From NCBI RefSeq assembly GCF_002571385.2, contig NW_019217806.1, positions 280,982-344,981 on the forward strand: a stretch of DNA of 64,000 nucleotides. Reading direction: 5' to 3'. Shown here piece by piece: positions 28,178-51,432 of this stretch; the stretch's first letter is position 1, and each line of letters opens with the position of its first letter. The position numbers were made by a program, and so were the translations under genes. The notes beneath the pieces are model-generated. The model was given only the letters and a program-made list of their open reading frames with translations. It was not told the origin of the DNA and searched no databases. The DNA comes from Stylophora pistillata (Eukaryota).

Positions 28178-30443
28178 GTAACTGAATTTTATTTTTGTCT
28201 CTATTTTCTTATAGTGTTGTGATACATGTTATGCTAAAGCTGTGCCTTGAAGAAAAATGTTCGTCAAATTCAGTTTCGATTATCACTTTGGATCAAGCAA
28301 GAAGACTATTAGTTTAAGGTTTGCAATCAATACAAAAGACTGTTTGTAAGATAGATTTATTTCTGTAAATTTTTCACGAGATTTACGCTCAGAAAAACCC
28401 TATCATGTAAGTAGCACATTGCTTAAAAAAACGAACAAATATCTTATGCTATAAGAAGGCTGGACTGCTTGTGTTATACGAGTTGATTTCACTTTGCTCA
28501 CCATATTCCACTAACATAAAGTTGGAATGTTTTTTATCCACACTTTCTTATTTGAAAAATAGGGTTTCAATGAATTAAAAAATTATCATGAGTTCTTTGT
28601 GTTACAAGTTACTCAATATTAACAAAAGAAAATACTGTTATATTGGATTTCGTGATCTCCACATTCATATTTAGTCGCGCTATGTAGGAAATGGTGGTAC
28701 AAAACACAGGATGGATCGTATCAATAGCATCCTGTTAGGTTTGCTGGTTTACTAACTTGTAAAATTAATTAATTGATTTAGTTTCTTGCATGAGTAACTG
28801 TACGCTTGAATAGAGTGGATTAGAGTTTGCTAAAGACAATGAACAAAATAGTTTATGAGAAATTAAAGGATAAGAAAGCCCGTTTATTGAGCTTTAAATC
28901 CGGTTTTGTCGAATTAGCCCCTGCATGATTTCATTTTGAAATGATCTACGTAGGAGTTAAAACTGAACAGCTAGTGTTAGTTTGAAAAATGAAATGATTT
29001 GATCATTTGCATGCTAATTCCAACGGCTTCATCACAAGAAAATTCAAACAAGTAGACGAAATACATTTGCCACAGGATGAACATTGAAACTACCCGTTAA
29101 CTTTCCTTTCACAAAATCATAAATTTTTGGAAAGAGTTTCTTGGGCATTTTGTGTACTAAAAATATGCTCCTTCTCCGCTTATTTCTGAGCTTCTCGTAC
29201 TTAAGGTCAGTTAGAATCGAGAGAAAATTTTGAAAGTTCAGAGAATTAATCAACCATGAGGCCTTATCATGGGGTTGTTTTTAGTTCATCTGTGCTCACG
29301 AAGATCACGGAAGACTCGAAAATAACCAGTCCTGTGATGCGAATTTCGCCAACGCAAACATTCCATGCGGTATATTTTTATTCTGTTGTCTGCGTATATA
29401 TCCTGCAGCGCACGATCTACATGTAACATATTCCGAGAGTTTCAGAATACCACCTGACACTTCTTTTATCTCCTCGCACTGTAATTATCTAACAGATACT
29501 ATCGGGAATCGAAGCAGAGTCACGGATGAAATTTGTATCATTACGCTGGGGCATTCATATCATATCCATTGATCCTATATTTATACATATGATTGCGAGA
29601 ATACTTAGGTTTTCAAATTAATCAGCTGAGAGGTAGGTTAGAGTGCATATTCTTTCCTCCTCAAAACTTCATCCTCAAAGAGTAATCTAAAAATAGCGAT
29701 TGTTGCGTCGTAAATGATCTTCACGTAGACATCACATGTGGGATCTGTCTTGTTCTCCATCAGAGTAAGCAGGAAAATAAAAGGGTGGGAAGAACGCGAA
29801 AAAAGTCAGGCTGAAAATTTTCCAAGTTTATGCAGCTGCAAGTTTGTCTTCGCCTGATCTTATATCATGTCCCATCCATGTCCCCTCTTTTAGCCCCAAT
29901 TTTTTTTGATTAGCAGTTTTAACCGGTTTCTCTGAAATATACACACGGATATTCTTCGTTTTTACATTTTCTTCAATTCACTAACTTTGTGGAACTATCT
30001 TGATAACCAAACCTGTAGTACAGACTGTTTCGACAAAAACTTTGAAATAAGATTAATTTCTGTTGGATATTTCAGACTTTCAATTTTATTGTATATATTT
30101 ATACGCTGATTATTTCGTGACCTCCTCGCAAAAAGTTTTGCTTGTATAATTGAACCTTGTAAGGAACAAAATGTAACAGTATTTTTCATTATCTGAGGGC
30201 TGTTACGTCATCAGTTCTTATCCCAATATCAGCTTTGTAGATGGCTCAACTATAATTTATTTAGTAATCGTTTAAACTTAACTTTTCATGGACATGCCTC
30301 TCATTCTGCTTAACATCTCTGCATTTGATTATCATCATCATCGTTATCATTATTGTTTTCCTTTCTAGCGACTCTGTGTTGGCTAAATCAATAAATTGCG
30401 CTCCACAATCTAAACTGAGTAAACGTTTACAACAACACCTGAG

Positions 30444-31694
30444 ATGAACCGACAGCTACTCTCTATTTTAGCAATAATAACTTTCCTCACGATAGCTGAC
30501 CTTAGCAGCAGAACTGGTTGTGAAGCGAATCAACGACGTAGAAGGTTCACGTGGCACCGAAGGCGTTTGATCACACATCGACCGACGAAGTCTGCATGGA
30601 ATAAAAATGGCCAGGTGAACATGAATTCACAAAAGCCAGCACAAAATGATGATGACACAATAGAAACACAAGATTTTGATAATGAAGAACAGGTTGGAAA
30701 ATTCTACGAGGAAATGTTCGGAAGTGGTAAGATGCATCGTTTTTCTCTAACTAATAGGATCACAATTTTAAAAAGCTTCAATTTAAATCTTCAGTTTTCA
30801 AGATGTGACTCAATTCGTTATTAAAATTTATATCAAAATCCTGCTTGCTGGATAACGTATTGAGAGGTTACATGTTTATCCTCTGTGTTAGTTAGATAGT
30901 TAAGCAAAGAGGTTTCATTCATTTTTCACAAACTTAGTGGAAAAAAAAGCCTTTACATTGAGCTTCGTGCTGTCTTAACGAAATAAACTTTCAAACAGCA
31001 CAGCACAGATAAAAATCACATGGAAAACTCTGGAAAACCAGTCTACATTGATCTTAGTTTTAATAATAAAAATAATAATATAGATCAATTTCTATAGCGC
31101 ATTTCCATGTAAATGCTTTAATGCGCTTTACAACACTGTGCGGGGGACTTTTCTAGACTGCCGGCGGCAGTTTACAATATATAAAGAAGAAATTTTTTTC
31201 AGATGCCCCCTCCCCCCATTCCCAGTAACCAGGCCAGACCACATCACAGTAATCTCGTGCTGTGGGTACTTTAACGTCCCCTGCCGAAATTAACTAATTG
31301 ATAGATGCAGGAGATGGGACCTCCGGCTCTACGTCCTATCTGAGAAGACGAAGCAATGTGAGTGAAACGTCTTGCTTAAAGGACACAACGTGAAGCCCGA
31401 GCCAGGACTTGAACCCGGGCCATCTGACCAAGAGTCCAGCGCACTGAACACTGGACTACTCACGCCTCAGTTTTGCATCTGATTGGTCGAGAAGTTGGCA
31501 CTTATTTTCTGGACCAATCACAGAGAGCAGGGAAACAGACCACTGCAGTTTAGGATTTCTCTTAGCAGTCAATTGAAAATGCCACTTTACGACGCACGTG
31601 TGGGTAATGTTAACTTGTCCAGTCGCTTCTCTACTAACTATAATATTTTTTTCAATTTTTTACAGGTGATATGCGTTACCCACATGAACCTTGA
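30444..31694 (+). CDS. Small secreted Arg-rich peptide precursor A, 103 aa (coding exons 30444-30726 and 31666-31694)
   Basis: Signal peptide MNRQLLSILAIITFLTIADLSSRTGCEA, then NQRRRRFTWHRRRLITHRPTKSAW, then an acidic region (NDDDTIETQDFDNEEQ). Phase-1 donor G|GTAAG at 30726 and acceptor ttttttacag at 31665 give ...FYEEMFGSGDMRYPHEP*. Confidence 0.8.
31061..31468 (-). mobile_element. tRNA-derived SINE in the last intron of gene A
   Basis: Minus-strand A box (TAGTCCAGTG) and B box GGTTCAAGTCC (31405-31415), then GTTGTGTCCTTTAAGCAAGAC, the shared body and a (TAA)n tail. Possible AGTTTT TSD. Confidence 0.85.
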
Positions 31695-34600
31695 TTTTTA
31701 CGAAGACTAGAGATGTTAAATGGAGTCGATAAAAATATAGTTTTGTAAATGTTTTAAATTCATTATATTAATTTATAGAAAGGAAATTGTATTATTTAAC
31801 TGATTTATTAAAGAGGATTATTGGTGCGTCTTGAAACATTACACGAATCATCACCTGCAATCTTCGTAGGTCTCCGTTGTCTCTAAAGTATTATTGTCAC
31901 ATCCCATTCTTGGAAAATTCAGTGATTTACGAGAGTGATTGCTTTTTTTTCTCAAGAAAACTATGAGACTACAACCGAAAATAGTACACGTACAGACTTT
32001 TCCATATATAACTCACTGAAAAACCAGCATACATTCAGTTACGTATTTTTTACACTGATGAGACTGAAAGTTACAAACCTTTTCTGGGTGATCCTACAAA
32101 ATACAGATTGACTGAATAAACTAATCAACAGATCAGTTATTAGCAGCTATTACGCAATGCACATTGGAAAATTTCTACCATGCAAAATGTTTAATCAGTC
32201 ATTTAAGTCTCTCATAAAAAAAGTGTATTTCTGGAAAGAAAATGTTTTAAACTATTACGATAGTTTTACTTCATGCAACTTTTAAAAGTATATAAGTGTA
32301 CAACTGTAATATAATGAAGACAGAAGACGTGAAACAGTGCTGAATTTGGCATGGTTCTGTGCTTCTCCATCTCTAAGACATTAAAACTGAATATCAAACG
32401 GAAAGGAAGATGATTGAAAGGTAAGCAGTTGAATAAAAACGCCAGTAACAGTTTGAACAGAATTTAAACTCACTTTTGTAGATTCAAAATAATTAGAAAA
32501 TAAAAAGAAAAGACTTGATACATGAAAATTAGATGTCAGCGTTTGAGTAAAAGAATTTTTTCCAGCGCACTTTTGCAATATTCAAAATTTCTTTGACAAT
32601 GATGTCGTTTTTAGTTTAGTTTAGTTTTGTTTTTCCTTTAATAGTGCACTTCTTAACACTACGACACTTTTCTTAAGCCTTAAGAATTTGATTAAGTTTC
32701 TAACTGACCGTTAAACCACTGTTGTTAATCTAGAAACAGAAAGAGATCCATGCATGCAGAGCGAAAACATAAATTAGAATAACAGGGATAATTTCAAATT
32801 GCAGTTGAAGAGGTCAAAACATGATAAAACTGGCAATTTCCACGCTGCTGTGCTTTATTGTTTCCCAATACGCTCTTATCAAAACTCTTCTCAAATCCTT
32901 TTATATACATTTCGTTTAACTTAAAAGTTTCCCTTACAGACGATTAAACTACCATCGATGATACATTTCGAGTACGAGAATATTTTGTCGCAGAGTGCTG
33001 TTGAATGGCTAAGTATGTTGTTCACAGTTGTTGATGCTGCCAACAGAGTGTTTTACATTCACACAGTTGTCCAACACGTAACCGAGTAAGTTAATATGAT
33101 TATTACTTACCTTCGTGGGGGTAGAATATCGTTTATGTCATGAGCCGTGCTCAAGCGAGATAAAGTTTTAGCAAAAGGAAACGGAGTTCGTTGCATTTAC
33201 CAAGATCTAGACCACTCTATGTCTTCATGAAATAACATGTATTCGCCAGACACAAAGAAACGTCCAATTACAGGATATTTACCCGAACGTTTTGACGTAG
33301 GTTATAAAATTTTTATTGTAATGATAAGGCCCTGGCTTTTGTGATAAAATTTAGCGCTTAGCAGGATGTCAGAGTATTCTTAGACATCTACTAAAACCTG
33401 GCGAAATTTTTTACTGAATAGCTTCTCTTAATCCCTTTTCTAGTTTAAATTTTATGTGATCGAATCTGGCAAGATAACAGCTCTGCCCGCTTAACGTAAG
33501 ATGTTTAATTCTTTTTCCTAAAATAATAATAATTTGATGATATACTTTGCTAAAATTTCTCGGAACTGAGCAATGAACCTCTCGCGTGCTGGTAGAACCT
33601 ACAAATACGACGACTGTGAAGACGTATGTATTCCGAAGGTTTGTGGGATTGGATCGTGAATTTTATCTGATAATTTACCCTTGGGGATTTGCTGTCTTTA
33701 CGAACTTACCTATCGCGCAGTGGGTTGTCCTTCGAAATAAACCCTTTATTACAAGTGGATTATTCTTTCCCATTCATCGATTTGAATTCGTATCCTGAGT
33801 ACAATGTACCAAGGTATGTGCAAAGAAAGCTATATTTTTCATCATGATTTCTGATGCAGAATCAAATGATAAAAAAATAACCTGTAGTATGCAAAGAAAG
33901 AGAAGAAGATGTATAGAAAGAAGGATAAACAATATAGTAAGCTGTTTGTTATATGATACGTTCTGGATAAATTGCAAACTTCTCCCCACTTCATTGGATG
34001 GAAATAATGATGAGGATGGTGTACACGTCGACTTGTAGAATGATTTTACTGACCCCTCCCTCCGTTTTCAACCCTTATATGGAACACAGAAGTAGGAGCT
34101 CAGGGACTGAGTCATCTAAAATTGAAACGAGGCGTACACAAATACAGTCGACCGCATGCAACGTTTTCCATGAATTGAATTACATGTAGCAGTTGCGACT
34201 AGTAAATATGTTAAGCATTTCAGATTCCTCGCGATTTCGAGAAAATTCCACTTTGTTACTATGCTGTTTGAAATACTTGTGTTAGTCAATAAAATAATTG
34301 ATTTCATTTGAAGTTAGTCTTATTCAAGCCAGAAAACCCACATCTAAAAGGTTATCTCGAGAAGAAATTGCTGTCCTTAACACTTTTCAAGTAAGGACTA
34401 ACTTTTTTCGCGATATTTTGAAGATAGTGTGTACGCTAACTCTGTGAACCTTTTCGGAAAGTGATTTATAATTTGGCGTAATCCATGATGTTATGAACAT
34501 CTTTGATTATACTTCATCGATTAAAAAATCCGTTCGAAAACTGGCTTACCAATTAATATAAATAGAAACTGTGTGCTGAGAAAGAATTGTTACGCGTGCA

Positions 34601-36676
34601 AATGTTTTAAAAACATAATCAAAAAATATCTATAAAACTCAACCAAGAAATATATTCATGTTGTATAATGACATACATATGAATCAACTTATCGAAAGTT
34701 ATCCTTCAAGCAATCCGAGAAAAAAATTTAAGAAATTGCTTCCGAAATTTATGTGCCGATATAATACCGTCAAAAGTTACCTTCGTCACCTTTAAAATGC
34801 CTTTACCATATTACACATACAACTAATTGTTTTCGTGATGTCTCGCACATTTTTTATTATTTTCAAAATCTTGATAAATAGTGACCAATGCGCTTTAGGT
34901 GAATAAAATACATCCAGCTTGTTGATTACTTCTTGTGAAATGCAGTTCTCAGAAGAAAACATAAATCGAGTGGCAGACTAACAAAAATTATTGTGGCATT
35001 CTAATTCACGATTCCAGGCAAATTTTAAGAGTTTTGTGCCTCGTAAAAATGGTCACAAACAATGAGCAGATCTCTCAGTTACATCAGAAAATATTTGTAA
35101 GAAATTCTCAGGGATATGCTTACAGATAAAGCAGTACCTTATGAATACATCTCTTGAATCCACTGTGCAGGGCAAAACCATGTCTTTCTAGTACGTTGTT
35201 TATCAGCAAAGGGTTGCTACCCTCATTTCTTTCGAGCTTCCTTTCTAGGTTTTTAGCTTAAGAGGCAATCACTATAATTGCGAGACACTTTACAGCCTGA
35301 TGTACATAATAAACTTCAGGTCATTTACTTATGTGAAAAATATTGCTGTTTGAAAAGAAGGACAGTTTAAGCTATTTAAAAATACTTAGCTATGAGTGAG
35401 CAAAACTTTAAAAATCCCACTATCAAACGTGTCCGCCACTGAAGAAACTTTTCTCTTTTTGCACTGGGCGTAGCCAGAGATAAGATCACTCAGCAATCTT
35501 TGTACAATTTTTGTTTAAAGACGAAAAGCTATTATTTTCACGTCCGCTACCATTTCATCATTTTAATTTACCTTTTGTTTAACTTTTTCGGCACATTAGT
35601 CGACAAAACAACTTTAGATACAATGTGAGGGTTAGCGTAACTAAACTTTTTAGTAATTCGAAAAATATAAACATTTCTAAGAAGTACAATATCACCTCGA
35701 CTATGTCTAGTCCCAATAAATTTTCACCTTCACGTTAAAAATTTTTTAATCCTATAAGGTCAATTTTGCTATTGATTATCCCCTTTATGTCTCGGCTTTA
35801 AAACTTTTTAGATAATTTATAAGCAAACGTGTACAACGCTTCTCCATCCTATATTGCGAAATTCCATGTTTGAGTTTAAAAACTCCCTTCCTCATACTGA
35901 AGAGGATTTACTGATTAAAGTGCGTCATATTTTTTCATTTCTACACGTAAGTAACAAAAATTGAATTAAATTGATTTCTGCGTACGTATGTGTTATTTTC
36001 ATTTGAACATCACGCAATGCTTTGATGGGTAAGTTAAATAACATAAGGTACTGCTTTAACATCTCCTAGTTATTGATTTTTGAGTTAATAAAAACGAAAT
36101 CAAAAATATATCATCTGATTTTTAAAGCAAGCTTAATGGGAAAATTCCTGGAAGAAAAAAACACAAGCTGAAACACATATCAGGTTTATATCGTTTGAGT
36201 TTTTTGATAATATGTGTTCTGCGTCAAGAAAAAAACTCGACATATTTCAGGAACGAAACTTATGAAAATTGTCCACGCAAACACTTGACCTTGTGTTCCA
36301 TACTTTACAAGGCAAAGTTTGAAGATTTCTTAGGAATTACTGGTACTATTTAGCCTAAAGTGGTAAATTGTAGAAGCTAATACATTAAAATAAATTGAAT
36401 CTAATTTAATTGTGTGTAGCACAAAAAAAAAAAAGCCTCTCAGTTTCGGCGACTCAAAGACAAATTGTTTGGGATTTACGTGCAGTAACTTAAATTAAGA
36501 AAGAACGAAATGGAATGTCATGCCGCATAAAAAGTCTGTTTGATAGCTTAGAAAATAGTATGTGCAAGAAAAAGCTCAAATAGATTTAAATATTAAATCA
36601 AACAAGATGTTTAAACACATGAGAATTTTTAGTGAAATTCTAAAGTTTTACGTTCGCGATGATGTGTAGATTAATG

Positions 36677-36922
36677 AATAAAGGCTGATAGTTTCGAAAG
36701 AAACTGTTTGGAGCTGCGTCGGTGAGGGTAACGAAATAATTTGGATATATCAACAAAGTTGAAATGGTAAATTGGCCACCGTAACGATTACAAAAGCTGA
36801 CGTTTCGAACGTTAGCCCTTCGTCGGAGCGAATGACGAAGGGCTAGCGTTCGAAACGTCAGCTTTTGTAATCGTTACGATGGCCAATTTACCATTTCAAC
36901 TTTGTTGATATATCCAAATTAT
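36677..36922. mobile_element. Palindromic Penelope-like pseudo-LTR pair with hammerhead motif
   Basis: 14-bp TSD TGTGTAGATTAATG at 36663-36676 and 36923-36936. 90-bp inverted arms at 36735-36824 and 36834-36923 with a 9-nt loop. Minus strand has GCT-CCGACGA-AGGGCTAACGTTC-GAAA-CGTC-AGC. Confidence 0.85.
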
Positions 36923-37229
36923 TGTGTAGATTAATGTCTAGATGAAGAACCCCCGCTGTTAAATCATCACTTGCAATCGCGAAAAATCACCCCGCTAGTT
37001 GGTTCTCTATGCCGCTTAAAGGAATCCCTATGATATTCCCATAGTAAGGTTGAAAAAATTGGAAATGAGGATTTAGCTTTGGTGGTTCCTTATTTGTGTT
37101 TTTTCTTTGTAAATACAAAAATTAGACATAAATGATTTCACCAATTTCGGTTTAATAAATAATTTTGCTGCTAAAAAAATTATCTGACGCGGCAAGTTCT
37201 TATCGGAGAAGCTGTTAAAACTTTGAACT

Positions 37230-37362
37230 ATGCGGTGTTTACGCCCGCACAGTAGTTCGAGGGATTGGGCCCCACACCTGACTCACACTCATGATCTTAG
37301 AATGACTGAGGAAAACATGCCACATAGGCATTGCAACTTTATCTGCAAATGGTTACACATTA
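37230..37362 (+). mobile_element. Highly decayed SINE head, similar to the 20.6-kb head
   Basis: acactcatgatcttagaatgactgaggaaaa...tctgcaaatggtta resembles the 20.6-kb head (acactcagggtcttaaaaataactgaggagaa). Confidence 0.45.
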
Positions 37363-37371
37363 TTATATTCT

Positions 37372-37681
37372 GGCCAATAAGGAGATTTTATTACACGACT
37401 CGGGTATTCAGAGGGCCAATAACTAAAATCAACCAATCAAAATGCCCTATTGCCGGTCAATATTCTCTCAGTATTGGACCGGGCACTGTCCCGAATGGTC
37501 CCGAATGATACCGCACTTGTGTCCCTTTGAACTTCAGTCGTACAATAAATCTCTTATTAACCTTTACTGAAAGAATATCGGCCCTCGGTCTTTTTGTACG
37601 GACCTCACTGCGCTCGGTCCGTACTGTCAAGACCTCGGGCCGATATTCTCCCAGTACGGCCCTCGCGCTTGGTTAATAAGA
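37372..37681. mobile_element. Non-autonomous element with inverted repeat plus terminal hairpin
   Basis: IR aataaggagattttattacacgact ... agtcgtacaataaatctcttatt, then hairpin TCTTATTAACC...GGTTAATAAGA (37552-37681). Confidence 0.7.
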
Positions 37682-40600
37682 TATATATAGCTAGCTTGGC
37701 ATGCAGGCCCTTATCGCAAGTGTGGGAAGCGTAGCTCCCAGTTTTTTTATATGATTTTTATCTGTCTCAGCTGGTCCTAATCTCCATATCTCTGCCAAAC
37801 TCCAGCTGCAGGTGTAAACAAATAAATAAACAAAAAGTTCATCAAGACTCGTTGTTCAATGTGATTCTGGTTTTAGGTCTTTGTATGAAATGCTAATATG
37901 GGACTGAACTGTACTTTCATGTAGTACTGCAGTAAGTGTGATTCGGCTGCTTCTTGGGTCTTCGGATAAACCGCCAATTAGTAACCACTTAAATGTGAGC
38001 GGATTTATTTACATACGCTACTGTTTATCATACTGTGCAAGGCGGTTCAAACTCTTTTCTTGCCCATTGTATCCATGGGGAAGCCTTTGTCAGCTACCAT
38101 TTAGATTTGTAGATTTTGATGAGTATTCATTTAATGCCAGTTGAGCATTACTTCTTAGATCTATTCACTCATAAGTAACCTTACAATACCGATACATTTT
38201 TAAAACGAAAGTCGATGGGAGAAATGAGAATCGTCAACCAAGGATGTTTTTGACTGAAAGTGCTTAGAGCCAGTTTGACACGAAAAGCATGCCAGACAGA
38301 GCGAAAATTTATAGCTGGATCTTATGGATAAAAGGATTAAAGGAGATGCAAAATATAGATCAATTAAGCTAAAAAAAACTGTCTAGATCACAAGAATAAC
38401 CCAAAGAACAATGAAGCGAAATGTTAAGGGCCAAGGGTGGACAAGATTACTCTTCCCTTCAATGAAATCTGGTTTAAAATCTTAGTTCCAGGCTTACGTT
38501 CTCATTTCATCACTTATCACCGTAACGCACATCTCGAGGAAGGCACAAACAAAATAAATTTCATTTGGGTATTTTTATTTTTTGGGTCCTCTAAAATACC
38601 GCTTCTCAGGCCCCTGTGAGGTCTCATGTTATAAAAAGGGCAATAAAACAGATTTATATAACGTAGTCTTCAACTTGATAAGGCTTATACTTTGAAAAAT
38701 TTGTAAGCGTGCTTTCCACGCCGCATAGGATCCATTTCGGGGAAATCCCAAAATATTGGTTCAATAAGATGGAAAAACTGCTAAACACCTGAACTAACAT
38801 GTTTGAAGATTGATACTAATAACATCGATTTAAAATGATTTCATTATTAATTACTCTTTTAAGACACAAAATTTTGTCCTGTGGAGCACCTTTAACCCCA
38901 CTGTAATGTCAACTATGGCCTTTAAGAGTTGACGTCTTACACCGAGTATTTTGCGAGTTTTTGCTCTTGGCCTCTACGACTGATTTAGATTTTTCGCATT
39001 GAAAGGAAATTGCTTATACAAGAAATAAATAAATTATATTCCTCCTACAAGAAAGGCTCTTACTCATCAAAATTGTTTTATCACGATGGCCCCTATTTGT
39101 GATAAAATTGTAACTTAGTGTCAGCGGGGGGTTGTTGCTTCGAGGCTTCAGACGCACACACGAACGGTGGCTCTCACGCGATCTCATGGAAATATGAATT
39201 CAATATTACAGCTTACTTACACGCATAGTCCTCGATCTGCAAAAATGAGTTCCCATAGAATAATCTCCCGTAAACTAAAACGCCACAAAAGGCACCACTT
39301 TGAGTCGAATGGGAAGAGGAAAGAAAAGAAAATGAAAAACGAAAAATTAACAACTTACAACAACAACAGCACATGGATCAAGTGTCAATTCGCATATTTG
39401 GACTCAATGAAATAGCGATCTACGAATCATTCTCCGAGTATGACTCGACAAATAAGAGAGCTGACAATTTATATGTTTCTTTCTGCTTGAAGAGATAATC
39501 GATAAGATTTGTTCTCAGCACAAGTTTTAGTCTTTTAATCTTCTCAAAATGAAAAATATTGTTCCTTCGAAAATTAAAACAAAAACAAAACAGATATCGA
39601 TACACAAGAAATCGTCAACCCTTGCGATACACCTCCTGCAAAATTGTCAAGTCACACGATACATTTCTTCTTAACGACAATTCACTTTTTTCGAGAAGCG
39701 TAAATCCGGTTCTGTTATTTCCGCGATTTCTTAAGCCTTGCAACTGTTTGGGCCATAGCTCGCCATAAAATGATATGATTTGTTCGGTTATGGCTGGTTG
39801 AAATTATACCACTTAGAGGAATAAAAAGTATGAGTGAGTCAAAGGCGAGAAAAAGAACAAAAACAGTGAGGTACGAATCGGTGAATTAAAAGGACGACGA
39901 ATGAGTACGAATGAAGAAGAATTGGACAACTTCTTTAAATCTAAGTATTCAAGTGTTCATTGAGATAAATAATCTCGTCAGCAAACTAGCGCGACGGCAC
40001 GCAGAGCTTCGGTCCCGTTTTAGTGGAGATACGCGGGTTTCGTGATAAAATACCCTTATCTATGTTATAGTTATGTGTTTGGCAAATACTCTGTTTTTCA
40101 AACAGAATCTTCTCATTCTTGGGAAGTACGCAATTAATTGGATTTCATCAGCATGCATCATTCAGTTTGTCGTGATCACGAACAAATCAGTGGACGTTTA
40201 GCTCAAACTACATTAACTGACCCACGGTTTTGGTTGCAGACTCTTAAAAATAGAGCCCCAGAGAGACGACAGATAGTGTTTCTTTGTTACGTGGGGGCTA
40301 AATGAAGAAGAATTCAAACACCACTGCATCAAAAAGAGTCATTAAACTCTGTGGGGTTAATCTGCCCTGAAAAGCTTCAGTAGGTGACAATTCTAGAGGG
40401 TTCGGAACGAAAATGGGCCAGGGAAGGATCCATTAATACCTTGTAGGGTGAAAATTTTGGGGATGTTTGTTCTGCGGATTTTGCAAATTGTCCTCGGTCC
40501 TAAAAAAAGGATTCCCGCAGAAAAAAAAAAAGTCCCCAGGTTAAACACCGCAAAAATTTACATCTTCAATTAGGTAAAAATTTCTGACTGCGAATCAAAC

Positions 40601-43600
40601 GTTATTTTTTATTCTTTCTATTCGAAATCGCTCGAATATACATATTCGACTTTGTCTCTTTTCAATAGGTTGAACAGAATATTGTAAATATTACTTCAAA
40701 AGATCATAATTGAGAGATCTCGTACTGCAAAATTCTCTCCCGTCAGACACACAGAACTAACCGATCTGTTACGTTAAATTCTAATCCTGATGTTGCACGG
40801 CTGGAACACAAAAGTCGAACCAAAAATATCGATTCATTGCGTGACTAAAGCGCATATAGTCATCGCACTTTTTTCCATGAGTTGCCAAAAAAAGGTATGG
40901 CCTAAGTCATCCGGCCTAAACTGTTGCTTTGTAATATTCCGTCTGAAAGATAACACGATATATCGTGCAATGAGCTGTTGCATTCGAGACTTCCGGACCT
41001 GAATTTGAAGCGTGTGCGTGGTTTTTAAAATGAGACAAATAGGAAGATATCAGCTGTTTTGCCCACAGGGATGCACTTTGGACACAACTAATTAATTTGT
41101 AAGTTAAACCGTTTATTTTTAGAGGCGAAACAAAACAGAACAAAACATAACAAAACGAGTTTAAAATAGCTGCTTTCCGAAAGAAAGCTTACAAATCAAA
41201 CAGACACCTTATTTGAAAATCTGTTCATATTGTATTTGATTGTATTTAAAAGTCACCATTCGTTGTTGAATGAGACAAAGTAGTTTGTTTTAGGTCTGTA
41301 TCTCGCACGGAACAAAGAACTCTATCCTTTCTCAATTGAAACAGCTGCGAAAGTTGTCAAAACATTCTCCTAGGAGAGCAATAAACCTAATGGCTAATTT
41401 AATTGGACTTAAAACATTTCTTTGGCTGGTATTTAACATTATGTTTTTTTTTACTTGGAATGTCGAAACGTTTTCCTCAATTTCGCTCTTTCATGTTCAG
41501 TTCACGAAATGAATGCCGGAAATAGCCAAAAATTGGTGAATGTATTTTTTATTTGCAGTCAGTGTGAAAAACGTGGGCATCCATTGTGAATAAATAGACG
41601 TTACCCAAAGAAGATAATTGGGTTTTGGCGAGGGAAGTCGATTGTTGTAGATAGGACGTATTAGCGGTTTTAAAAGACACAAAAAGGTAAGTTGTTTGAC
41701 TCGCCTCTCTAAATATGAGTCTCTTGAAAGAAGATCGTCCGAGCGTTAAATCAGAATGCTAACATTCTTCTTTTTCCTTTCGGTCAGCTTTCTAATAGTT
41801 TTGGACACTTTTGAATACAGGCGGAGCAAAATATCTCAAATTTTACTGCATTCTATTGTATTTGAAATGCATTCCTAGTAACTTTACAATTTTTTCTAAT
41901 TATTTATATATCATCGTTTGTTAAAGCTGGTCGAGGAAGGGATTTTCTTGCGGTAAAATTTTAGTTTAATGCTGTTGTATGTTCGAATTGCCTACCCAAC
42001 GTTTAAACCCACCATACTCTTTTCGGTCTCCAGTCGTAAGATTATCTTAACTTAGGGCAAAACTTTTCAGTAAAGATATTACTTGGAAAAGATTCTAATA
42101 GAAATTTAACCTTATTGAAATCCGGGCTATCAGGGCTGTAGACGTATTCTACATTGCTCTCGGTCAGGAAACACTGCCTGAAAGGTTTCAAAAGATATCT
42201 TGAGGACTCGTTACTTTCTATACTGAGGCGTCTTTTAAAGTAATTGCTATGAGTCAGCAATATAATGAGCTCTGAACGAGAAGATATACGAAAGGTGACT
42301 TTTCGTTGACCATGAATTGTACAGGATAAAAAGCTTACCCAACTGAAATTGCCGACGAGAATGTGATAAGGAAAAACATTCAATGCGAAGAACAATATTT
42401 CCAGACACGTTTCAAAACTGTGTATTTCCAAGTTTCCCTAGAAGAAACAAGAACTTCGATTCGCCGAAAATGTTGCGTTTTCTGAAACCAGGAACCCTGA
42501 CGGCAAATCATTCGCGTTTCTACTTTGGACTCCAGGCATCTCTCCGCATGGTGTGCCGAAGGGATGATCTGGCGCAGTTAGTAAAAGTAAACTCAACAGG
42601 CCCCTCACGAAATTCTTAACGGAAATGATGGTTCGTCTTCAAATCTTATTGTCCTCTAAATATCCCCTTTACCTTGGCTATTATGACAACTGAATTTATA
42701 AAGATGGATTAATTTCCTCAGTAAAAATCGTTTATCTGAAAAGTACAAGGAGCAATGGATCACATTTTCCCTCCGGGCACTGTAGCGTTCTTATCCCACA
42801 CGGAATGTTGAGAGAACAAGAGAAAAACATGCAAATTACTCGCCTTACGGCTCGCCATTTGCAGTCTTTTTTTTTTTTTTTTCAGTTTTACAACTACGTT
42901 GTTGCAAACCGCTCAGCATCGGAAGATACATGTACAATTAATAAAAGAAACCTCTAAAAGGGACGTTTTGATAGCGTAAATCAAAATTTATTGTTCAATG
43001 CAATCTGTAAACCAGTCTGCAAAGTGAAAAAAAAACTCTTTAGTAAAACTGAAGCAATTGGCAAGTCGCTAGAGGGCCTAGACATCTTATCTTGGCTTTC
43101 CAGTCCATAAAACAAACTGCCACCTAACACCACCTCAAACGGATGTCGTTATTAAAGTAGCTCTTCCATATGATAGTAGGGACCAATAGCAGTTCATCTG
43201 GCGAAAGGAGTCTGCTTTTGCGATTTTACATCAAAATGGAAGCACATATGCAAAAGTCGATTACAAACTCAAGAGAGAAAATATAACAAGTCATTTTATA
43301 GCAAAATTGTTGGAAATTAAGATTAGCAGCTGCCATTTACTTTATCATAAAACTGAGTGAGGCAACTAAAAGTATTTTCAGGTATTAAGTCGAGGGAACG
43401 TCTGAAATGATAGGTTATAATTCACTCGTTTTATCCTTCATGTTTTTTAAATCGTATTATTGCGTGACTCCTGCTGCTTTCAATTTAATTTCAACCGCTG
43501 CATGTTCAAATAAAACACATTCTCAGTCTTAGTTGATTTTCTAACGTTTGGGAATTGAGCGTATGCCGGATAATTTTACCCATCACGAATCCATGTTGAC

Positions 43601-43966
43601 AATAATGATGCATACAATCAGTGACAACGAAACAAACATTAAACGAAGAAAAATACTACAACAAAGTTATGAATCGTGAACGGTGAGAGCCGACCGCAAA
43701 GAATACTCAGCGGTAGAAATCTTCCTAACGGAGAGCTATCATATTAATAACAAATCGTTTGTACTTTATTCTTGATAAGTTAAGTGATCGTGCTGATCAA
43801 TAACATTTCATTTCATTTCAATTTGGAATTCGCATTAGGCCTGTTTTTAAAGTTTTATTGGAAGTCGCTGGATGAATATAAATTGAGACGAATAAAAGAT
43901 GACGGTGACGAATAATGATGGCAATTCTAATGATCCTAACGTTTATTTTCCTTCAGAAATTTTGTC

Positions 43967-44224
43967 ATGCAGTCGTCCAGGCCTCTCTGCGTTTTCCTGC
44001 TCGTCTTTTTCCTCTGTAATTTAATTATGGCGATCAACTCCGAGGGCAAAACACCTTTTCGATTTCATCGTCGTTGGATTCCACGTAGAAATAAACACAA
44101 GAAGCCAGATGGTAAGACCAATGGGAAAAGATATGCATGGTCGCTGACAGAAGATACAAGGACTGAACCGACAGCATGGGATTCACCGAATGTAACAGAG
44201 ATATCAGAGATTGTTTTTATTTGA
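43967..44224 (+). CDS. Small secreted cationic peptide precursor B, 85 aa
   Basis: Acceptor ttttccttcag at 43956. Signal peptide MQSSRPLCVFLLVFFLCNLIMAINSEG, then KTPFRFHRRWIPRRNKHKKPDGKTN-GKR (amidation and dibasic site), then an acidic tail. Donor TG|GTGAGT at 44235, acceptor tttcacag at 45005, AATAAA at 45333. Confidence 0.8.
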   Translation: MQSSRPLCVFLLVFFLCNLIMAINSEGKTPFRFHRRWIPRRNKHKKPDGKTNGKRYAWSLTEDTRTEPTAWDSPNVTEISEIVFI

Positions 44225-44493
44225 AGAGATACTTGGTGAGTGGAAGCAACGTCTTTTCTGTGTGGGCGTGTATGTAATGCTGTTTGAACAAAAATCAGCG
44301 ACATTCGAGGAGCAAGCATGTGTGTCACTGATTTCTCAACTTAAGGGATGATGACTCCTTCTTGTTTAACCCTGGTTTGGACGTTGTCTGTTGTGATGTA
44401 TACATGAGGAGACAAACTGCAATCTATCTTCTCTTGACATAGAAAAACATCTTAAAGAGATTCTCTCAACACTCAACCGTTAATTTTTTTTCT

Positions 44494-44939
44494 AACTTTT
44501 TGACCCCTAAGAATCGCTAGCATCTAATATCTCCTTACAATATCACCCCTGAATCAAGCACTAAGATGACAAGAATGAAGGAAATGATAATCAACTAAAG
44601 AAACTCTTACGGTCTGATTATTTAAACAAGGCGTAGTGTTGTTTAACAAAACCACGTCCAAAACAATCCTTTAATTTAGCTGAAGCTTTTATCTAAACAT
44701 TTATTTTTGTGAATAGCGTCAAGAGAGCTGAAAACTAACAACGGAAAGGCATTTTTTTTAATTAAGTCAACCCTCTTATAGAGAAAGCCTTAGGCCCACT
44801 GATTGCGTAAAACCTTGGTTAAGGTTGGATCTTGTGTAAATAACCGGCCCATAGTTGTTGAGCAAATTCTCCTTGTCAACCCGTGAGGAAATGTATTAGT
44901 AAATAATATGCATATTGATGCTGAGGGTATCAAGGGTAA
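44494..44939. mobile_element. Decayed piggyBac-like MITE interrupted by a nested MITE
   Basis: Ends resemble (T)TAACCCTTT...AAGGGT(T)AA with a recognisable internal stretch (catctaatatctccttacaatatcacccctgaatcaa ... aaattctccttgtca). Confidence 0.55.
44610..44850. mobile_element. Nested MITE (Harbinger-like termini)
   Basis: Imperfect TIRs CGGTCTGATTATTTAAACAAG / CTTGTGTAAATAACCGGCCC. Confidence 0.6.
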
Positions 44940-45383
44940 GTCGATCTTTCGTGATTTCAAGCACAATCAACATCTAATACACTATATGTGTTTTGTATTT
45001 CACAGGATAATCAAGTTAAGTCTGCTCGGTGAGAATCAATGGACAGGAAAGACGACAAAACTATAGAATATGCTAAAACATAGGGATAGTAATTCATTTG
45101 CAAATTATGACCATTCTAATATGACTGTTCATTTTATGGAAAAACTAAATATATGTCGCTAAAACTTTACCACATAAAAAGAACAAGGCTGTTGATTTGT
45201 TATATTAAGTGAACAATAAGCATCGATAAGCTACAAATGCAATAGCTTTCGAGCATTTGACTGAAGTTTCATCATGGAATGATTGATAATTTCTTAAATG
45301 CGCAATAGAGAAAAGTATACATGAATGCTATAAATAAAAATTTAAGACTTTGGAAAAGTGAAGTTGGAATAACCAATTTATAA

Positions 45384-45818
45384 TGGTAATTGAACTGAGA
45401 AGAGTGCAATTTGGGCTGAAATCATACGCGCGTGATTTCAAAATCGAACGAGCGCGCAGCACAAGTTCGATTTGAAATCACGAGTATGATTTCAGACCAA
45501 ATTGCACGACACGAGGTTCAATTACCAATTTATTTCATCCATTTTGAAATCGCCCAAATACAGGACTTGGTCAATTCAAATATTTTATTGATGCAGTACT
45601 GAGCCAGTTTTTAAATAAAAAGCGGAACTGGAAACGCTTTTACATCTTATTTTGTATGCAAAACAGAAAGACTTTGACGTCATGTGTCATAAACTCAGTC
45701 ACAAGCATAAAATGATGCAATTTAGAGCAAAAACTGGTGCGATTTGTGAATAAATTGCACTAATTCGAGCCAATCAGATTACAGGGACCACCAGTGATTT
45801 CAAAATGGAAGTAATAAA
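45384..45818. mobile_element. Non-autonomous element with terminal hairpin plus inverted repeat
   Basis: Long hairpin 45384-45527 (TGGTAATTGAAC...GTTCAATTACCA), then IR tttatttcatccattttgaaatc ... gatttcaaaatggaagtaataaa. Confidence 0.75.
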
Positions 45819-46357
45819 TCACGAACCTTACCCTCAAGGGGATGAGAAATTTAGCGCGGGAAATTGCCGAAGGCCAAGATAAGTTGTTAAATAAGGCTTG
45901 GAATATAGATCTCAGATGTGTCGGAAAGAACCAACTGAAAGATAAACCATGAACAAATAGAAACCATTATCGAAGAAAAAACACAAAAACTCAACGATTA
46001 AAGTTTGAGCGACATGACAATATTTGAACTTCATATTTCGCCAATAAATATGAGGGCCCAGTTTTATAAATGATTTCCACTAAAATTCAAGTCCAGTGGC
46101 GATGAGAACGCTATAGGGAATCCGAAAAAAGGGGTGTACATGGCCGATCCTAATTCATCATTTTGTAATTTCAATTACTTTCGTTGAGTTAATTCATTCA
46201 TTTGCCGGACGTCAACCTGCCAACCAACGCGGCGAAGAAGGGAAGAATGTACAAAATGAGTTTTGCAGGTCCTACAAAGTCTTCTGAATCACCCGTGAAG
46301 AGAGGGAAAACCATCATACTTCTTCAGTAAAACACCGCAGAAAGTTAAGAACTCGTC

Positions 46358-49215: not shown

Positions 49216-51432
49216 TTTTTAATAATACAAGGGCTTTCCACTAGTCAACTATAACTGTAATTAACAACGGCTCAACTTCACTGGAGTACTAACAACCCTT
49301 GACACTGAATTGTCGTCGATTTCTTTGTGGCACAGATATTTTGCCGGTGTACACCGGCCGTGTAAAATTGTGTCTCTCCCTGCAGTATCGATTGATCGAA
49401 CCTTTACACTTGAAATCAACTCAGTTTCAGCCATCTATTAATTTATCGTGCACTTAGGTAATTAATAAAACTAATTGAAAGGCTATTTTGTCTGTTTTAT
49501 CTACCAAGTTTTCATAGTCTATCACGGTCCTTACGCACAAGTCAACACTCAAAAATAAGGATAATTTTTTCCCAAAAAAGTTTCACGATCTCTTCAGAAC
49601 CTTCTGGACCGAGCGAACTCAGGAATAACGAGGTAAAATAGAGCACATTTACAGTTTTCGTTTTTATGCGTTACATATTTCTGTGTGGTCGACAGTATGC
49701 AATATTGTAACTTTTCTTCGCCAGCCCTTGTCGCGGATACACTATCTACAGACGGCGATTATTACCTTCAAATACTAAACTTTGACAAAAATTTGTGCCC
49801 TTACGAAGAAAAATTTATATTTCTTTCTGTTGACTGACTTGCTATATAGTCTATCATTAATAATAGTACATACAAAGAATTTTCTTCGAGTTGGTATTAT
49901 AGCTTCCCGATAAATTGACATAACACGCAACAGTTCATTAATTTAAGTCTAAAATTTCACAGGCAAAGCCGACATAGTTCCTGAGGCTAGTTTTAAACTC
50001 AAAAACAAAAACAACAAAAATATTTGTGGTATCACTTCCTTAAGGAAAAAAGTCTATCAGTGCATGGATTACCATGCAAGCTTGGTTGCGTAAATTTTTA
50101 AACTATGGAAAGCAAAACGAAGCGAAGACAGAGAAATTGATCGATTTTGTTTTACACGAGGAACGACTAAGAAGAAATCGTTTTTGCAGTTCGAGAGGGG
50201 GGGGGGTGGTGCGCATTCGTTTCAAAACATTGACGAATTATTTGCAGGGAACAAACAGACTACACAGAATTTCTTTTAGCCCTTTCAGCACTCGTTCTAA
50301 AAGATCTAAAAGCGCCGTGAACAAAGACCAGCGCAATGACATGAAACCTCCATTGAGACGTGTTATTATAGAATTACTTGCGAGCACTTTGTTAAACGTT
50401 CTTAATTCTCCCACCGTCAGCTATTTTCTGACGTGAAAGTGTAGCTAATTTCTAAGCCAGCATCGTATCTCCACATTACACCAACAACGGCAGTAGTGGG
50501 ATAACAAGGTTTTCTACAGTTGACACTGACATTCGCTTGTTTGCCTTGAAAATAACATAATCTTATGTTAGCTTGTCAAGGATCCAAAACTAATTTTTCA
50601 CACCAAGTTATATCTATTTCACGTTACGTAACTATACGACTGAATGGCCAAGAACTGTGATAAATTTCTTCATGATAGTCGTAAAGAAGGAGTTTATCTA
50701 AATGAGAAGGATGAAAAAAAGACATTATCTGTCGTTTGCGTGCTGAACAGTCCGAGTTTAATCGATATATTTTTTTTATCATGGTAACTCATATAACAGG
50801 CGCAAAACTATGTTATATAATAGCTTCAACGTGTAGTCTCCGATCTTAATAAACTCGAGACAACTGAGAAGATCTGATTTTCTTCTTGATATCAAAGAAC
50901 TTATCGCAGTAAACATACGTTACGTGAAAAATATAACAAGTTTTCTTTCAGCTTATATAGTTTCTCTACTTAAAAGTATATACCGCAAATCTCTGGGCGT
51001 GGTATTTGTGAGTGTGCAACAACTGAGAAATGGCTAAGTTTACACCAACGTGTAATCTGTGTTGAGTGCAAAATGAATGGCTGGCTGCTCCCACGCGAGC
51101 ATAATTGATGTCACTGTTTAATTTATGAAGCATTTTCAAATTGAGTGTTGAGAGCCTGATCCCATTGCATTTGTATTGTATTGCATTCAGTGTCCCCGCA
51201 ATTCTTCCGCTGAGTGGGAAGTCTCAGGGAGGGGATCAGGTATATTTTATTATGACACAAGCAAATTCCCCCCACTCTCTCCTCCCCCCGGCTATAAATC
51301 GTGACCTGTCTCTTATCGGTAATTGATTACTCTTGTTTTTGTTATCTGAAAATTGAATAGAATCATCATCCATATCCATATCATCATTCCTTTATTTCAA
51401 AGGCGTCAGACGAACAAAAACGAACAGTTCAA

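What the first reader, a model, noticed from the sequence alone, without database searches (positions are those of the whole stretch)
30444..44224. Two paralog-like, unassigned secreted cationic peptide precursors sharing an F-x-[WF]-H-R-R motif
Seen: two same-strand genes about 13 kb apart share a layout of an intron just before the ATG, one main coding exon and a short last exon. Each encodes a signal peptide ending in a small-residue site (GCEA| or NSEG|). An immediately following very basic, Cys-free segment (A: NQRRRRFTWHRRRLITHRPTK; B: KTPFRFHRRWIPRRNKHKKPDGKTN) leads to a K-x(1,2)-A-W motif and an acidic C-terminal region. Established: a cationic mature peptide plus an anionic C-terminal propiece is the layout of piscidin/pleurocidin and the tunicate clavanin/styelin antimicrobial peptides, and Arg/Trp-rich linear peptides are a known membrane-active class. 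The coral antimicrobial peptide damicornin is Cys-rich and different. Inference: this is a diverged tandem family of linear Arg/His/Trp-rich host-defence or signalling peptides that I cannot match to a named family.
Basis: partly seen in the sequence, partly recalled or inferred. Interest (0 to 1): 0.82.

Follow-up and report, generated by a model that had tools for sequence, protein, structure and literature searches.

The report
Two small coral signal-peptide genes
Both small genes are real and transcribed in this stony coral. The first belongs to an unnamed, unstudied small-protein family found in several stony corals, the second is at best a much-diverged tandem copy of it, and nothing tested supports an antimicrobial role.

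Summary
Both ORFs are at the stated coordinates (A 30444-30824, B 43967-44224), and both are intact and syntenic in Pocillopora-like coral scaffolds.

Gene A is spliced in polyA RNA from three studies. The junction is 30726|31666 (GT..AG), which gives a 103-aa product with a 9-residue last exon.

Gene B's exon is held by many polyA RNA runs at exactly the share expected for an exon ending at the predicted donor 44238. Its stop codon lies 14 nt before that donor, so B has no coding last exon.

The A-B similarity claim is weak:
- BLASTP gives E 0.45.
- A shuffle test gives p 0.27-0.38.
- The K-x-A-W and H-R-R motifs are not kept in either gene's orthologue.

New here: gene A is not an orphan. 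It belongs to a conserved stony-coral family with no Pfam model, named only 'hypothetical protein' in Desmophyllum and Oculina. Family members share an N-terminal signal-like helix, an invariant RR..W..RR..P block, a disordered linker, an acidic helix and a short last exon.

A profile of that family aligns collinearly with B at P 2.6e-4. With the tandem position and matching exon size, I put paralogy at about 0.55.

The cationic block is the most conserved part, which argues against a generic antimicrobial peptide. My best reading is small secretory-pathway pro-proteins of unknown, possibly signalling, function.

The parts
30369..30443 (+). Gene A, predicted 5' untranslated part of the main exon. 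It runs from the candidate acceptor at 30368|30369 and contains an in-frame stop at 30420-30422.
   Evidence: The acceptor ..ctag|cga is conserved in the Pocillopora-like locus. The in-frame TAA 8 codons before the ATG was read directly from the sequence. No RNA joint was seen at this acceptor.
30444..30726 (+). Gene A, coding part of the main exon: 94 codons plus 1 base. It encodes a signal-like helix, a poly-Arg/Trp block, a linker and an acidic helix.
   Evidence: ORF listing. RNA contigs cover 30442-30728, 30540-30725 and 30559-30725. The orthologue is 79% identical. dN/dS is 0.33.
30727..31665 (+). Gene A intron (GT..AG, 939 nt, phase 1). It contains a dispersed transcribed repeat at about 31088-31460.
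   Evidence: The joint is seen in runs X2, X13 and X9.
31666..31694 (+). Gene A, coding part of the last exon. It completes the Gly codon and then encodes D-M-R-Y-P-H-E-P and the stop.
   Evidence: It is nearly identical in the Pocillopora-like loci. The last exon of the Desmophyllum and Oculina homologues shares the pattern D-x-x-Q-P-x-E-P with the Pocillopora-like last exon; the window has Y in place of Q.
31695..31812 (+). Gene A 3' untranslated region, reaching at least 31782, with a candidate ATTAAA signal at 31807-31812.
   Evidence: An RNA contig covers 31665-31782. Identity to the Pocillopora-like loci exceeds 90% against a background of about 74%. The ATTAAA was read from the sequence and is unverified.
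43956..44238 (+). Gene B exon (predicted limits), from candidate acceptor 43955|43956 to candidate donor 44238|44239.
   Evidence: PolyA RNA runs from several studies hold 0.60 of the sampled words of 43956-44420, while DNA-type runs hold 1.00. An exon ending at 44238 predicts about 0.58. Both splice sites are conserved in L012. The limits are inferred; no joint was seen.
43967..44224 (+). Gene B coding sequence, 85 aa: a signal-like helix, a basic block with RR, RR, KK and GKR sites, and a weakly acidic tail with a conserved N-V-[TS] sequon.
   Evidence: ORF listing. The orthologue has 86 codons, the same start and stop, and one in-frame 3-nt indel. dN/dS is 0.72 between genera. Within the Pocillopora-like set there are 4 synonymous and 5 non-synonymous variable sites.

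Best explanation
Shown. These are two real, transcribed, protein-coding small genes of a pocilloporid stony coral.

Gene A encodes a 103-aa protein. It is a member of a conserved, so far unnamed family of stony-coral proteins of about 90-105 aa. Family members have, in order:
- an N-terminal hydrophobic helix ending in a small-x-small site;
- an Arg/Trp block with invariant W, RR and P;
- a disordered Pro/Gln/Asn-rich linker;
- a conserved acidic helix (QDFD..E..[YF]W..YENG);
- a phase-1 intron;
- a last exon of 8-10 residues.

Inferred.
- Gene B (85 aa) is known only from Stylophora-like and Pocillopora-like genomes. It is most likely a fast-evolving tandem duplicate of A. It lost the coding last exon through a stop just before the donor and carries one conserved G-K-R cleavage/amidation site.
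- The N-terminal helix is a cleaved signal peptide. In gene A its hydrophobic core is only 14 residues, which is too short for a membrane span.
- The mature, largely disordered pro-proteins travel the secretory pathway and are cut at the conserved RR(R/K) sites. The strictly conserved basic block and acidic helix then act by specific recognition (signalling or regulatory peptide or protein) rather than by generic membrane disruption.

The function itself is not shown.
For: Gene reality:
- A splice joint is seen in 3 polyA runs from 3 studies.
- The B exon is held at 0.60 of words in polyA RNA against 1.00 in DNA-type runs.
- Syntenic intact orthologues occur in collinear scaffolds that are about 74% identical overall, while the exons are 85-88% identical.
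- dN/dS is 0.33 for A and 0.72 for B.
- Each gene is single-copy in its own genome.

Family of A:
- The whole-library profile search gave six full-length homologues at E 3e-17 to 1e-4.
- The profile word search gave 23 proteins down to E 8e-44. They include KAJ7376101.1 of Desmophyllum pertusum and ACROYT_G024174 of Oculina patagonica, both named 'hypothetical protein'.
- Alignment A4 has invariant W37, R40, R41 and P47.
- The spliced C-termini are alike.

Structure: AlphaFold2 on 18 sequences gives helix 3-24, a disordered 25-80 and helix 81-92. The Atlas model of B has mean pLDDT 0.30.

B related to A:
- hhalign of the family against the B alignment gives P 2.6e-4 over 51 collinear columns, from the [DE]G-K site through the RR block to the D-S-P motif.
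- The Pocillopora-like B alone gives P 4.7e-4. Two control proteins from the window gave P 0.22 and 0.046.
- The two genes are on the same strand in tandem. The distance from ATG to donor is 272 nt in B, 283 nt in A and about 262-283 nt across the family. The spacing from RR to D-S-P is nearly equal (38 versus 39 residues, counted).

Cleavable signal: the small residues at -1 and -3 are kept across the family although the surrounding letters differ (TDG|Q, TDA|Q, CEA|N, VDA|N).
Against: - No signal-peptide or topology predictor could be run. In most family members the hydrophobic core is 17 residues and the C-terminal flank is far more basic than the N-terminal one, which would fit an uncleaved anchor with a cytosolic tail.
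- No peptide or proteomic data exist, so no cleavage is shown.
- The short x-x-W-x-x stretch between the basic sites is variable apart from W, and only 4 of 18 members have a Gly before the RR. This is not a classical conserved amidated neuropeptide.
- Homology of A and B is weak. The direct comparison is not significant. The family HMM does not recover B in the own genome at E <= 10. hhalign picks a different register for the window's B alone (P 0.0087). B lacks the invariant W and P.
- No B-like ORF was seen within 10 kb downstream of the A homologues of three other corals, nor within 10 kb upstream in Oculina.
Confidence: 0.5

Rival explanations
1. Small single-pass membrane proteins. In this reading the N-terminal hydrophobic helix is an uncleaved anchor. 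The poly-Arg/Trp block is a cytosolic juxtamembrane (stop-transfer or lipid-binding) segment, and the acidic helix is a cytosolic interaction motif. No peptide is released.
For: - The hydrophobic core is 17 residues in most family members and in B.
- The C-terminal flank carries about +4 net charge against about +2 on the N-terminal side, so the positive-inside rule (established knowledge) favours an N-out/C-in topology.
- The N-terminal helix is about as conserved as the rest of the protein.
- AlphaFold2 models it as a confident 22-residue helix.
Against: - In gene A and its orthologue the uninterrupted hydrophobic core is only 14 residues and is followed by Asp, which is too short for a membrane span.
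- A small-x-small pattern typical of signal-peptidase sites is conserved just after the helix although the letters differ.
- B keeps an N-x-[ST] sequon, which matters only on the lumenal side.
Confidence: 0.25
2. One reading: linear cationic Arg/His/Trp host-defence (antimicrobial) peptides, each released from a precursor with an anionic C-terminal propiece, as in piscidin, pleurocidin, clavanin and styelin.
For: - The layout is signal-like N-terminus, then cationic segment, then acidic tail.
- Arg/Trp-rich peptides are a known membrane-active class (established knowledge).
- B evolves fast (dN/dS 0.72), as many immune effectors do.
Against: - No antimicrobial-peptide family matched in Pfam.
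- In the A family the cationic block holds the invariant residues and the acidic helix is also strongly conserved. This points to specific recognition rather than a composition-driven membrane activity.
- The model gives the cationic block only a 4-residue helical turn, at low confidence.
- The block is interrupted by RR and RRR sites that convertases would cut into very short pieces.
- No induction data were available.
Confidence: 0.12
3. A and B are unrelated. B would be an independent, pocilloporid-restricted young gene that happens to lie next to A and to share a signal-plus-basic composition.
For: - BLASTP E 0.45.
- Shuffle p 0.27-0.38.
- Neither profile finds the other gene in the own genome.
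- hhalign gives two different registers.
- B lacks the invariant W37 and P47.
- There is no DNA-level repeat between the two loci.
- No B-like ORF lies near the A homologues of three other corals.
Against: - The profile-profile alignment is collinear over 51 columns at P 2.6e-4, and the controls score much worse.
- The genes are on the same strand in tandem.
- They share the exon plan and the ATG-to-donor length.
- The RR-to-DSP spacing is the same.
Confidence: 0.4

Closest known systems
Unnamed stony-coral 'hypothetical protein' family (Desmophyllum pertusum KAJ7376101.1; Oculina patagonica ACROYT_G024174; about 20 unnamed proteins from coral assemblies)
   Same: Gene A aligns over its whole main exon, with family hits at E down to 3e-17 with the A-only profile and 8e-44 with the wider profile. 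It shares the invariant W, RR and P residues, the acidic QDFD...[YF]W helix, the phase-1 intron after the Gly codon and the short last exon.
   Different: The pocilloporid A is the most diverged member, at 30-35% identity to most others. It has a longer stretch between the hydrophobic core and the basic block, and F-G-S-G in place of Y-E-N-G. B fits the family only weakly. No member has a known function.
Single-copy cnidarian preprohormones with the peptide directly after the signal sequence (Antho-RWamide and phenyllactyl-peptide type; Koch and Grimmelikhuijzen 2020, PMC7523074)
   Same: These are small precursors with a signal sequence followed at once by the candidate peptide and then basic cleavage sites. 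In most family members Gln is the first residue after the putative cleavage site, so it could form pyroglutamate. B has one conserved G-K-R site.
   Different: The A family has no conserved Gly-basic amidation site. The stretch between the basic sites is conserved only at W. The most conserved parts are the basic sites themselves and a 20-residue acidic helix. Neuronal expression is unknown. The family is not among those listed in the sections of that paper that I read.
Piscidin/pleurocidin and tunicate clavanin/styelin antimicrobial precursors
   Same: The order of parts is the same: signal, cationic segment, anionic C-terminal part.
   Different: There is no sequence or Pfam match, no predicted amphipathic helix in the cationic part, and strict conservation of the cationic block across the family.
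Damicornin (Pocillopora damicornis antimicrobial peptide)
   Different: Damicornin is Cys-rich. A has no Cys after the signal-like N-terminus; its one Cys lies in the G-C-E-A stretch before the proposed cleavage site. B has none after its signal region.

Membership tests
Unnamed stony-coral small-protein family (Desmophyllum KAJ7376101.1 / Oculina ACROYT_G024174 type) | Significant full-length profile similarity | tested here: met
   For gene A: six full-length hits at E 3e-17 to 1e-4 in the whole-library search with the A profile, and 23 proteins down to E 8e-44 with the wider profile.
Unnamed stony-coral small-protein family (Desmophyllum KAJ7376101.1 / Oculina ACROYT_G024174 type) | Invariant W37, R40, R41 and P47 in the basic block, plus the acidic D-F...[YF]-[WY] helix | tested here: met
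   Gene A has all four invariant residues and the D77/F78 motif.
Unnamed stony-coral small-protein family (Desmophyllum KAJ7376101.1 / Oculina ACROYT_G024174 type) | Phase-1 intron after the Gly codon and a coding last exon of 8-10 residues | tested here: met
   Gene A: the RNA joint 30726|31666 followed by 9 residues. The homologues end in D-[IV]-S-Q-P-S-E-P-G-F.
Unnamed stony-coral small-protein family: does gene B belong? | The same invariant residues, retrieval by the family HMM, and a coding last exon | tested here: not met
   B keeps the RR pair but has F (or a shifted W) at the invariant W and has no P47. The family HMM does not find B in the own genome at E <= 10. The stop precedes the donor. 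Only the profile-profile comparison gives a hint, at P 2.6e-4 and 42% probability.
Amidated cnidarian neuropeptide preprohormones | Peptide copy or copies followed by Gly plus basic residues, conserved across species | tested here: not met
   In the A family, Gly precedes the RR in only 4 of 18 members. The window's A has H-R-R-R.
Amidated cnidarian neuropeptide preprohormones | Gene B: a conserved Gly-Lys-Arg site | tested here: met
   N-G-K-R-Y is invariant in all 6 sequences of alignment A2, the window plus five Pocillopora-like loci, so in both genera. Processing itself was not tested.
Amidated cnidarian neuropeptide preprohormones | Expression in neurons or secretory granules, and detection of the peptide | not testable with these tools
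   Only whole-tissue RNA contigs were available.
Piscidin/pleurocidin-type linear antimicrobial peptide precursors | Family profile match | tested here: not met
   There are no Pfam hits above noise for A, B or six homologues.
Piscidin/pleurocidin-type linear antimicrobial peptide precursors | Cationic segment forming an amphipathic helix | tested here: inconclusive
   AlphaFold2 models only residues 38-41 as helical, at pLDDT about 54. Helices induced by membranes would not show in such a model.
Cys-rich coral antimicrobial peptides (damicornin type) | Conserved cysteine framework in the mature peptide | tested here: not met
   There is no Cys after the signal region in A or B.

The most novel reading that the evidence does not exclude
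The RR..W..RR..P / QDFD..YW..YENG proteins are a previously undescribed prohormone-like signalling family found across several stony corals, and probably order-wide. In pocilloporids a tandem duplicate (gene B) was remodelled into a new precursor with a conserved G-K-R amidation site. The locus lies about 18 kb from the GLWamide preprohormone gene. This would add a new peptide-signalling family to the small known coral repertoire.
Probability: 0.2. Interest if true: 0.6.

Novelty: new member of a known kind. Interest (0 to 1): 0.42.

Why it matters
Small taxon-restricted secreted proteins are routinely missed by genome annotation. In this search the family carried a name in only two deposited coral annotations, and only as 'hypothetical protein'. 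It has no Pfam model, and a full-text search of the held papers for its motif strings and two locus tags found none.

A family with invariant residues kept between corals that share only about 30% identity must have a specific function. Its layout (signal, polybasic sites, conserved acidic helix) makes it a testable candidate for coral peptide signalling or secretory regulation. Only about seven to ten peptide families are known in corals (PMC7523074).

The finding also corrects the antimicrobial reading. The motifs proposed as the signature are not the conserved ones.

Tried and rejected
Similarity between A and B:
- Direct BLASTP of A against B found nothing significant.
- The shuffle test did not exceed composition for the window pair.
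- Searches of the own genome with A, B and profiles A1, A2 and A4 found no further copies and no cross-hit.
- A DNA repeat search across 29800-46000 found nothing linking the two loci.

Family and fold searches:
- Pfam on A, B and six homologues gave only noise: DUF6508, DUF3592 and UstYa, all far below their cut-offs.
- ESM Atlas scores were below 0.8, which is uninformative.
- A PDB profile search gave E 0.9 only.
- I ran no fold search, because the model has no globular fold.
- P0008, a 647-aa repeat protein, hit the A profile at E 5e-6 in four short stretches. I set it aside as a repeat or composition match.

Search for a B-like gene elsewhere:
- ORF listings near the A homologues of Oculina and two unnamed corals showed none within 10 kb downstream in all three, nor within 10 kb upstream in Oculina.
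- An exact look-up of the Pocillopora-like B protein, both full-length and from the second Met, found no record.

Literature: a full-text search for family motif strings and the two locus tags found nothing.

Not done:
- The script machine was lost. The planned HMM-against-shuffled-B null and the trimmed family alignment were not run.
- The joined (spliced) 103-aa product of A was not sent to any search, under the operators' rule. Exon 1 was searched by reference and the 9-residue last exon was only read.


Full report
**1. What is in the sequence**

The + strand carries ORF A at 30444-30824 (126 aa if read through) and ORF B at 43967-44224 (85 aa).

The window is contig C23:280982-344981 of a 397.6-Mb, 5513-contig assembly. 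Its closest relatives here are Tara Pacific coral-metagenome scaffolds that are collinear with the window at about 74% nucleotide identity. I did not test that, but a pocilloporid coral fits. I call the scaffolds 'Pocillopora-like' on the same reasoning; their species was not identified either. Each gene is single-copy in the genome.

**2. Are they genes?**

Conservation:
- Both ORFs are intact at syntenic positions in 13 (A) and 6 (B) Pocillopora-like scaffolds.
- A's orthologue is 79% identical over the main exon.
- B's orthologue is 66-70% identical. It keeps the same start and stop and has a single in-frame 3-nt indel.
- The exons are 85-88% identical in nucleotides against about 74% in the flanks.
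- Nei-Gojobori dN/dS is 0.33 for A and 0.72 for B.
- Among the six Pocillopora-like B alleles I counted 4 synonymous and 5 non-synonymous variable sites, a ratio of roughly 0.36 per site.

RNA:
- A 465-nt query starting at B's candidate acceptor is held at exactly 0.60 of its sampled words by polyA RNA runs from several studies, and at 1.00 by DNA-type runs. An exon ending at the candidate donor 44238|44239 predicts about 0.58.
- Laying contigs of four RNA runs from four studies on 29500-35499 gave a GT..AG joint at 30726|31666 in three polyA runs. Contigs cover 30442-30728 and 31665-31782.

So A is spliced and B's exon is present in mature RNA. A's product is 94 codons plus one base from the main exon, then G-D-M-R-Y-P-H-E-P and a stop at 31692-31694, which makes 103 aa. 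An in-frame TAA at 30420-30422 fixes the start at 30444.

The last exon and 3' UTR are more than 90% identical to the Pocillopora-like loci.

B's conserved stop lies 14 nt upstream of its donor, so any downstream exon is untranslated. The internal GGTAAG at 44109-44114 is not conserved (GATACC in the relative) and is not a likely donor.

The 5' introns 'just before the ATG' are plausible. Both acceptors are conserved, and the Oculina homologue is annotated with a 5' exon. No RNA joint was seen for either here.

**3. Are A and B alike beyond chance?**

By direct comparison, no:
- BLASTP's best alignment has E 0.45 and does not involve the motif.
- Against 5000 composition-preserving shuffles, the local score has p 0.27-0.38 for the window pair, whether whole, mature or basic segment only. 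It has p 0.045-0.065 for the Pocillopora-like pair.
H-R-R becomes H-G-R-R in the A orthologue and H-S-R-R in the B orthologue. K-S-A-W becomes K-S-A-S and K-R-Y-A-W becomes K-R-Y-V-G.
- hhalign of the two small alignments gives P 0.0077 over 15 columns.

**4. What gene A is**

A profile of A and its orthologues, searched against 1.84 billion representative proteins, found six further full-length relatives at E 3e-17 to 1e-4. A word search with the widened alignment found 23 proteins down to E 8e-44.

Two of these carry names: 'hypothetical protein OS493_036864' of Desmophyllum pertusum and 'hypothetical protein ACROYT_G024174' of Oculina patagonica. The rest come from unnamed coral assemblies and sequencing runs.

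The 18-sequence alignment shows this architecture:
- M-[NDE]-R-K;
- a hydrophobic core of 14-17 residues;
- a small-x-small site (T-D-G, T-D-A, C-E-A, V-D-A), mostly followed by Q-K;
- R-R-[RK]-x-x-W-x(1,3)-R-R-[FLM]-[IT]-R-x-x-P-T-K;
- a variable Pro/Gln/Asn linker;
- Q-D-F-D-[SN]-P-E-D-A-x-E-[YF]-W-x-x-I-Y-E-N-G.

W37, R40, R41 and P47 are invariant. R32, T48, D77 and F78 are nearly so.

Unspliced ORF calls read G-K or G-E after this point (GT-AAG or GT-GAG donors). The two annotated, spliced members continue with D-[IV]-S-Q-P-S-E-P-G-F, which resembles A's D-M-R-[YQ]-P-H-E-P. The phase-1 intron and the short last exon are therefore family features.

Other searches were blank:
- Pfam has no model for the family.
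- The PDB has no relative.
- The ESM Atlas gives nothing.
- The motif strings and locus tags occur in no paper of the library.

AlphaFold2 with the alignment gives a confident helix at 3-24, disorder from 25 to 80 and a helix at 81-92.

**5. Is B part of that family?**

For:
- With the wider profile, hhalign against the B alignment improves to P 2.6e-4 (probability 42%). There are 51 collinear columns running from [DE]-G-K through the RR block to a D-S-P motif.
- The Pocillopora-like B alone gives P 4.7e-4.
- Two control proteins from the window, the GLWamide precursor and a TM protein, give P 0.22 and 0.046.
- Independent of sequence, the two genes lie in tandem on one strand. The ATG-to-donor distance is 272 nt in B, 283 nt in A and about 262-283 nt in the family. 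The RR-to-DSP spacing is 38 versus 39 residues.

Against:
- The window's B alone gives P 0.0087, and in a different register.
- The family HMM does not recover B from the genome.
- B lacks the invariant W and P.
- No B-like ORF was seen within 10 kb downstream of the A homologues of Oculina and two unnamed corals, nor within 10 kb upstream in Oculina.

I put paralogy at about 0.55. If true, the duplication is probably specific to pocilloporids and was followed by fast divergence, loss of the coding last exon and gain of a conserved G-K-R site.

**6. How it most likely works**

Shown: these are small, mostly disordered proteins with an N-terminal hydrophobic helix, conserved di- and tri-basic clusters and, in A, a conserved acidic helix.

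Inferred: the helix is a cleaved signal peptide. I rest this on two things. A's hydrophobic core is only 14 residues and is followed by Asp, which is too short to span a membrane. The -3/-1 small-residue pattern is conserved although the letters change.

After cleavage, convertases could cut at R-R-[RK] and R-R. The R-x-R-P pair should resist cutting, because Pro at P1' blocks convertases; this is established knowledge and was not tested here. The result would be a tiny W-containing fragment and a peptide of about 70 residues that ends in the acidic helix.

Strict conservation of W, RR and P and of the acidic helix across members only about 30% identical points to a specific partner, such as a receptor, an enzyme or an intramolecular basic-acidic pairing. 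It does not point to composition-driven membrane attack.

The main rival is an uncleaved anchor with a cytosolic basic juxtamembrane segment. That would fit the 17-residue cores of most members and the positive-inside rule. I could not run a topology predictor.

**7. Comparison with known families**

The closest relatives by sequence are the unnamed hypothetical proteins above.

By design, the nearest described class is the single-copy cnidarian preprohormone with the peptide placed directly after the signal (PMC7523074, sections 7 and 9). The A family lacks a conserved amidation site, so I do not file it there. B has one conserved G-K-R site.

The piscidin/pleurocidin, clavanin/styelin and damicornin comparisons fail on every feature I could test.

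**8. Limits**

- The script machine was lost, so a matched shuffled-B null for the profile comparison was not run.

**9. Verdict**

The notable result is that gene A belongs to a conserved but unnamed and unstudied stony-coral small-protein family. The antimicrobial reading and the proposed motif signature are not supported.

Noticed in passing
window 11852-12718 (-): A 288-aa ORF with a signal-like N-terminus and about ten copies of ..[NK]-[RK]-P-P-G-L-W-G-R-[GE]... This is a GLWamide-type neuropeptide preprohormone. It lies about 18 kb upstream of gene A on the other strand. GLWamide genes are known in all hexacorals (PMC7523074).
   Followed up: partly
window 31088-31460 (inside gene A's intron): Summed contig depth reaches the hundreds to thousands in all four RNA runs, with many loose ends. 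This indicates a dispersed, transcribed repeat. The sequence at about 31330-31470 looks tRNA-derived or SINE-like.
   Followed up: no
window 31695-31800: The 3' UTR of gene A is more than 90% identical to the Pocillopora-like loci, against about 74% background and about 88% in the coding exon. That suggests a constrained regulatory element.
   Followed up: partly
window 40079-41703: An intergenic block is about 80% identical to locus L004, above background. It contains a small ORF whose Pocillopora-like counterpart (93 aa) is recorded in 120 blocks of the collection. Its nature is unknown.
   Followed up: no
window 51368-51991 (+): A 147-aa ORF (51433-51876) with an internal hydrophobic segment lies in a block 84% identical to L012, where a 167-aa gene is called. 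It is probably a conserved small membrane-protein gene.
   Followed up: no
window 6433-7293 (+): Two adjacent ORFs of 149 and 127 aa look like a retroelement gag-type region. I did not examine them further.
   Followed up: no
L025:10001-10150 (Oculina patagonica): The deposited model ACROYT_G024174 starts at an upstream ATG in the 5' exon, which adds 47 residues before the family's conserved Met. In the window an in-frame stop rules this out, so the Oculina start is probably over-extended.
   Followed up: partly
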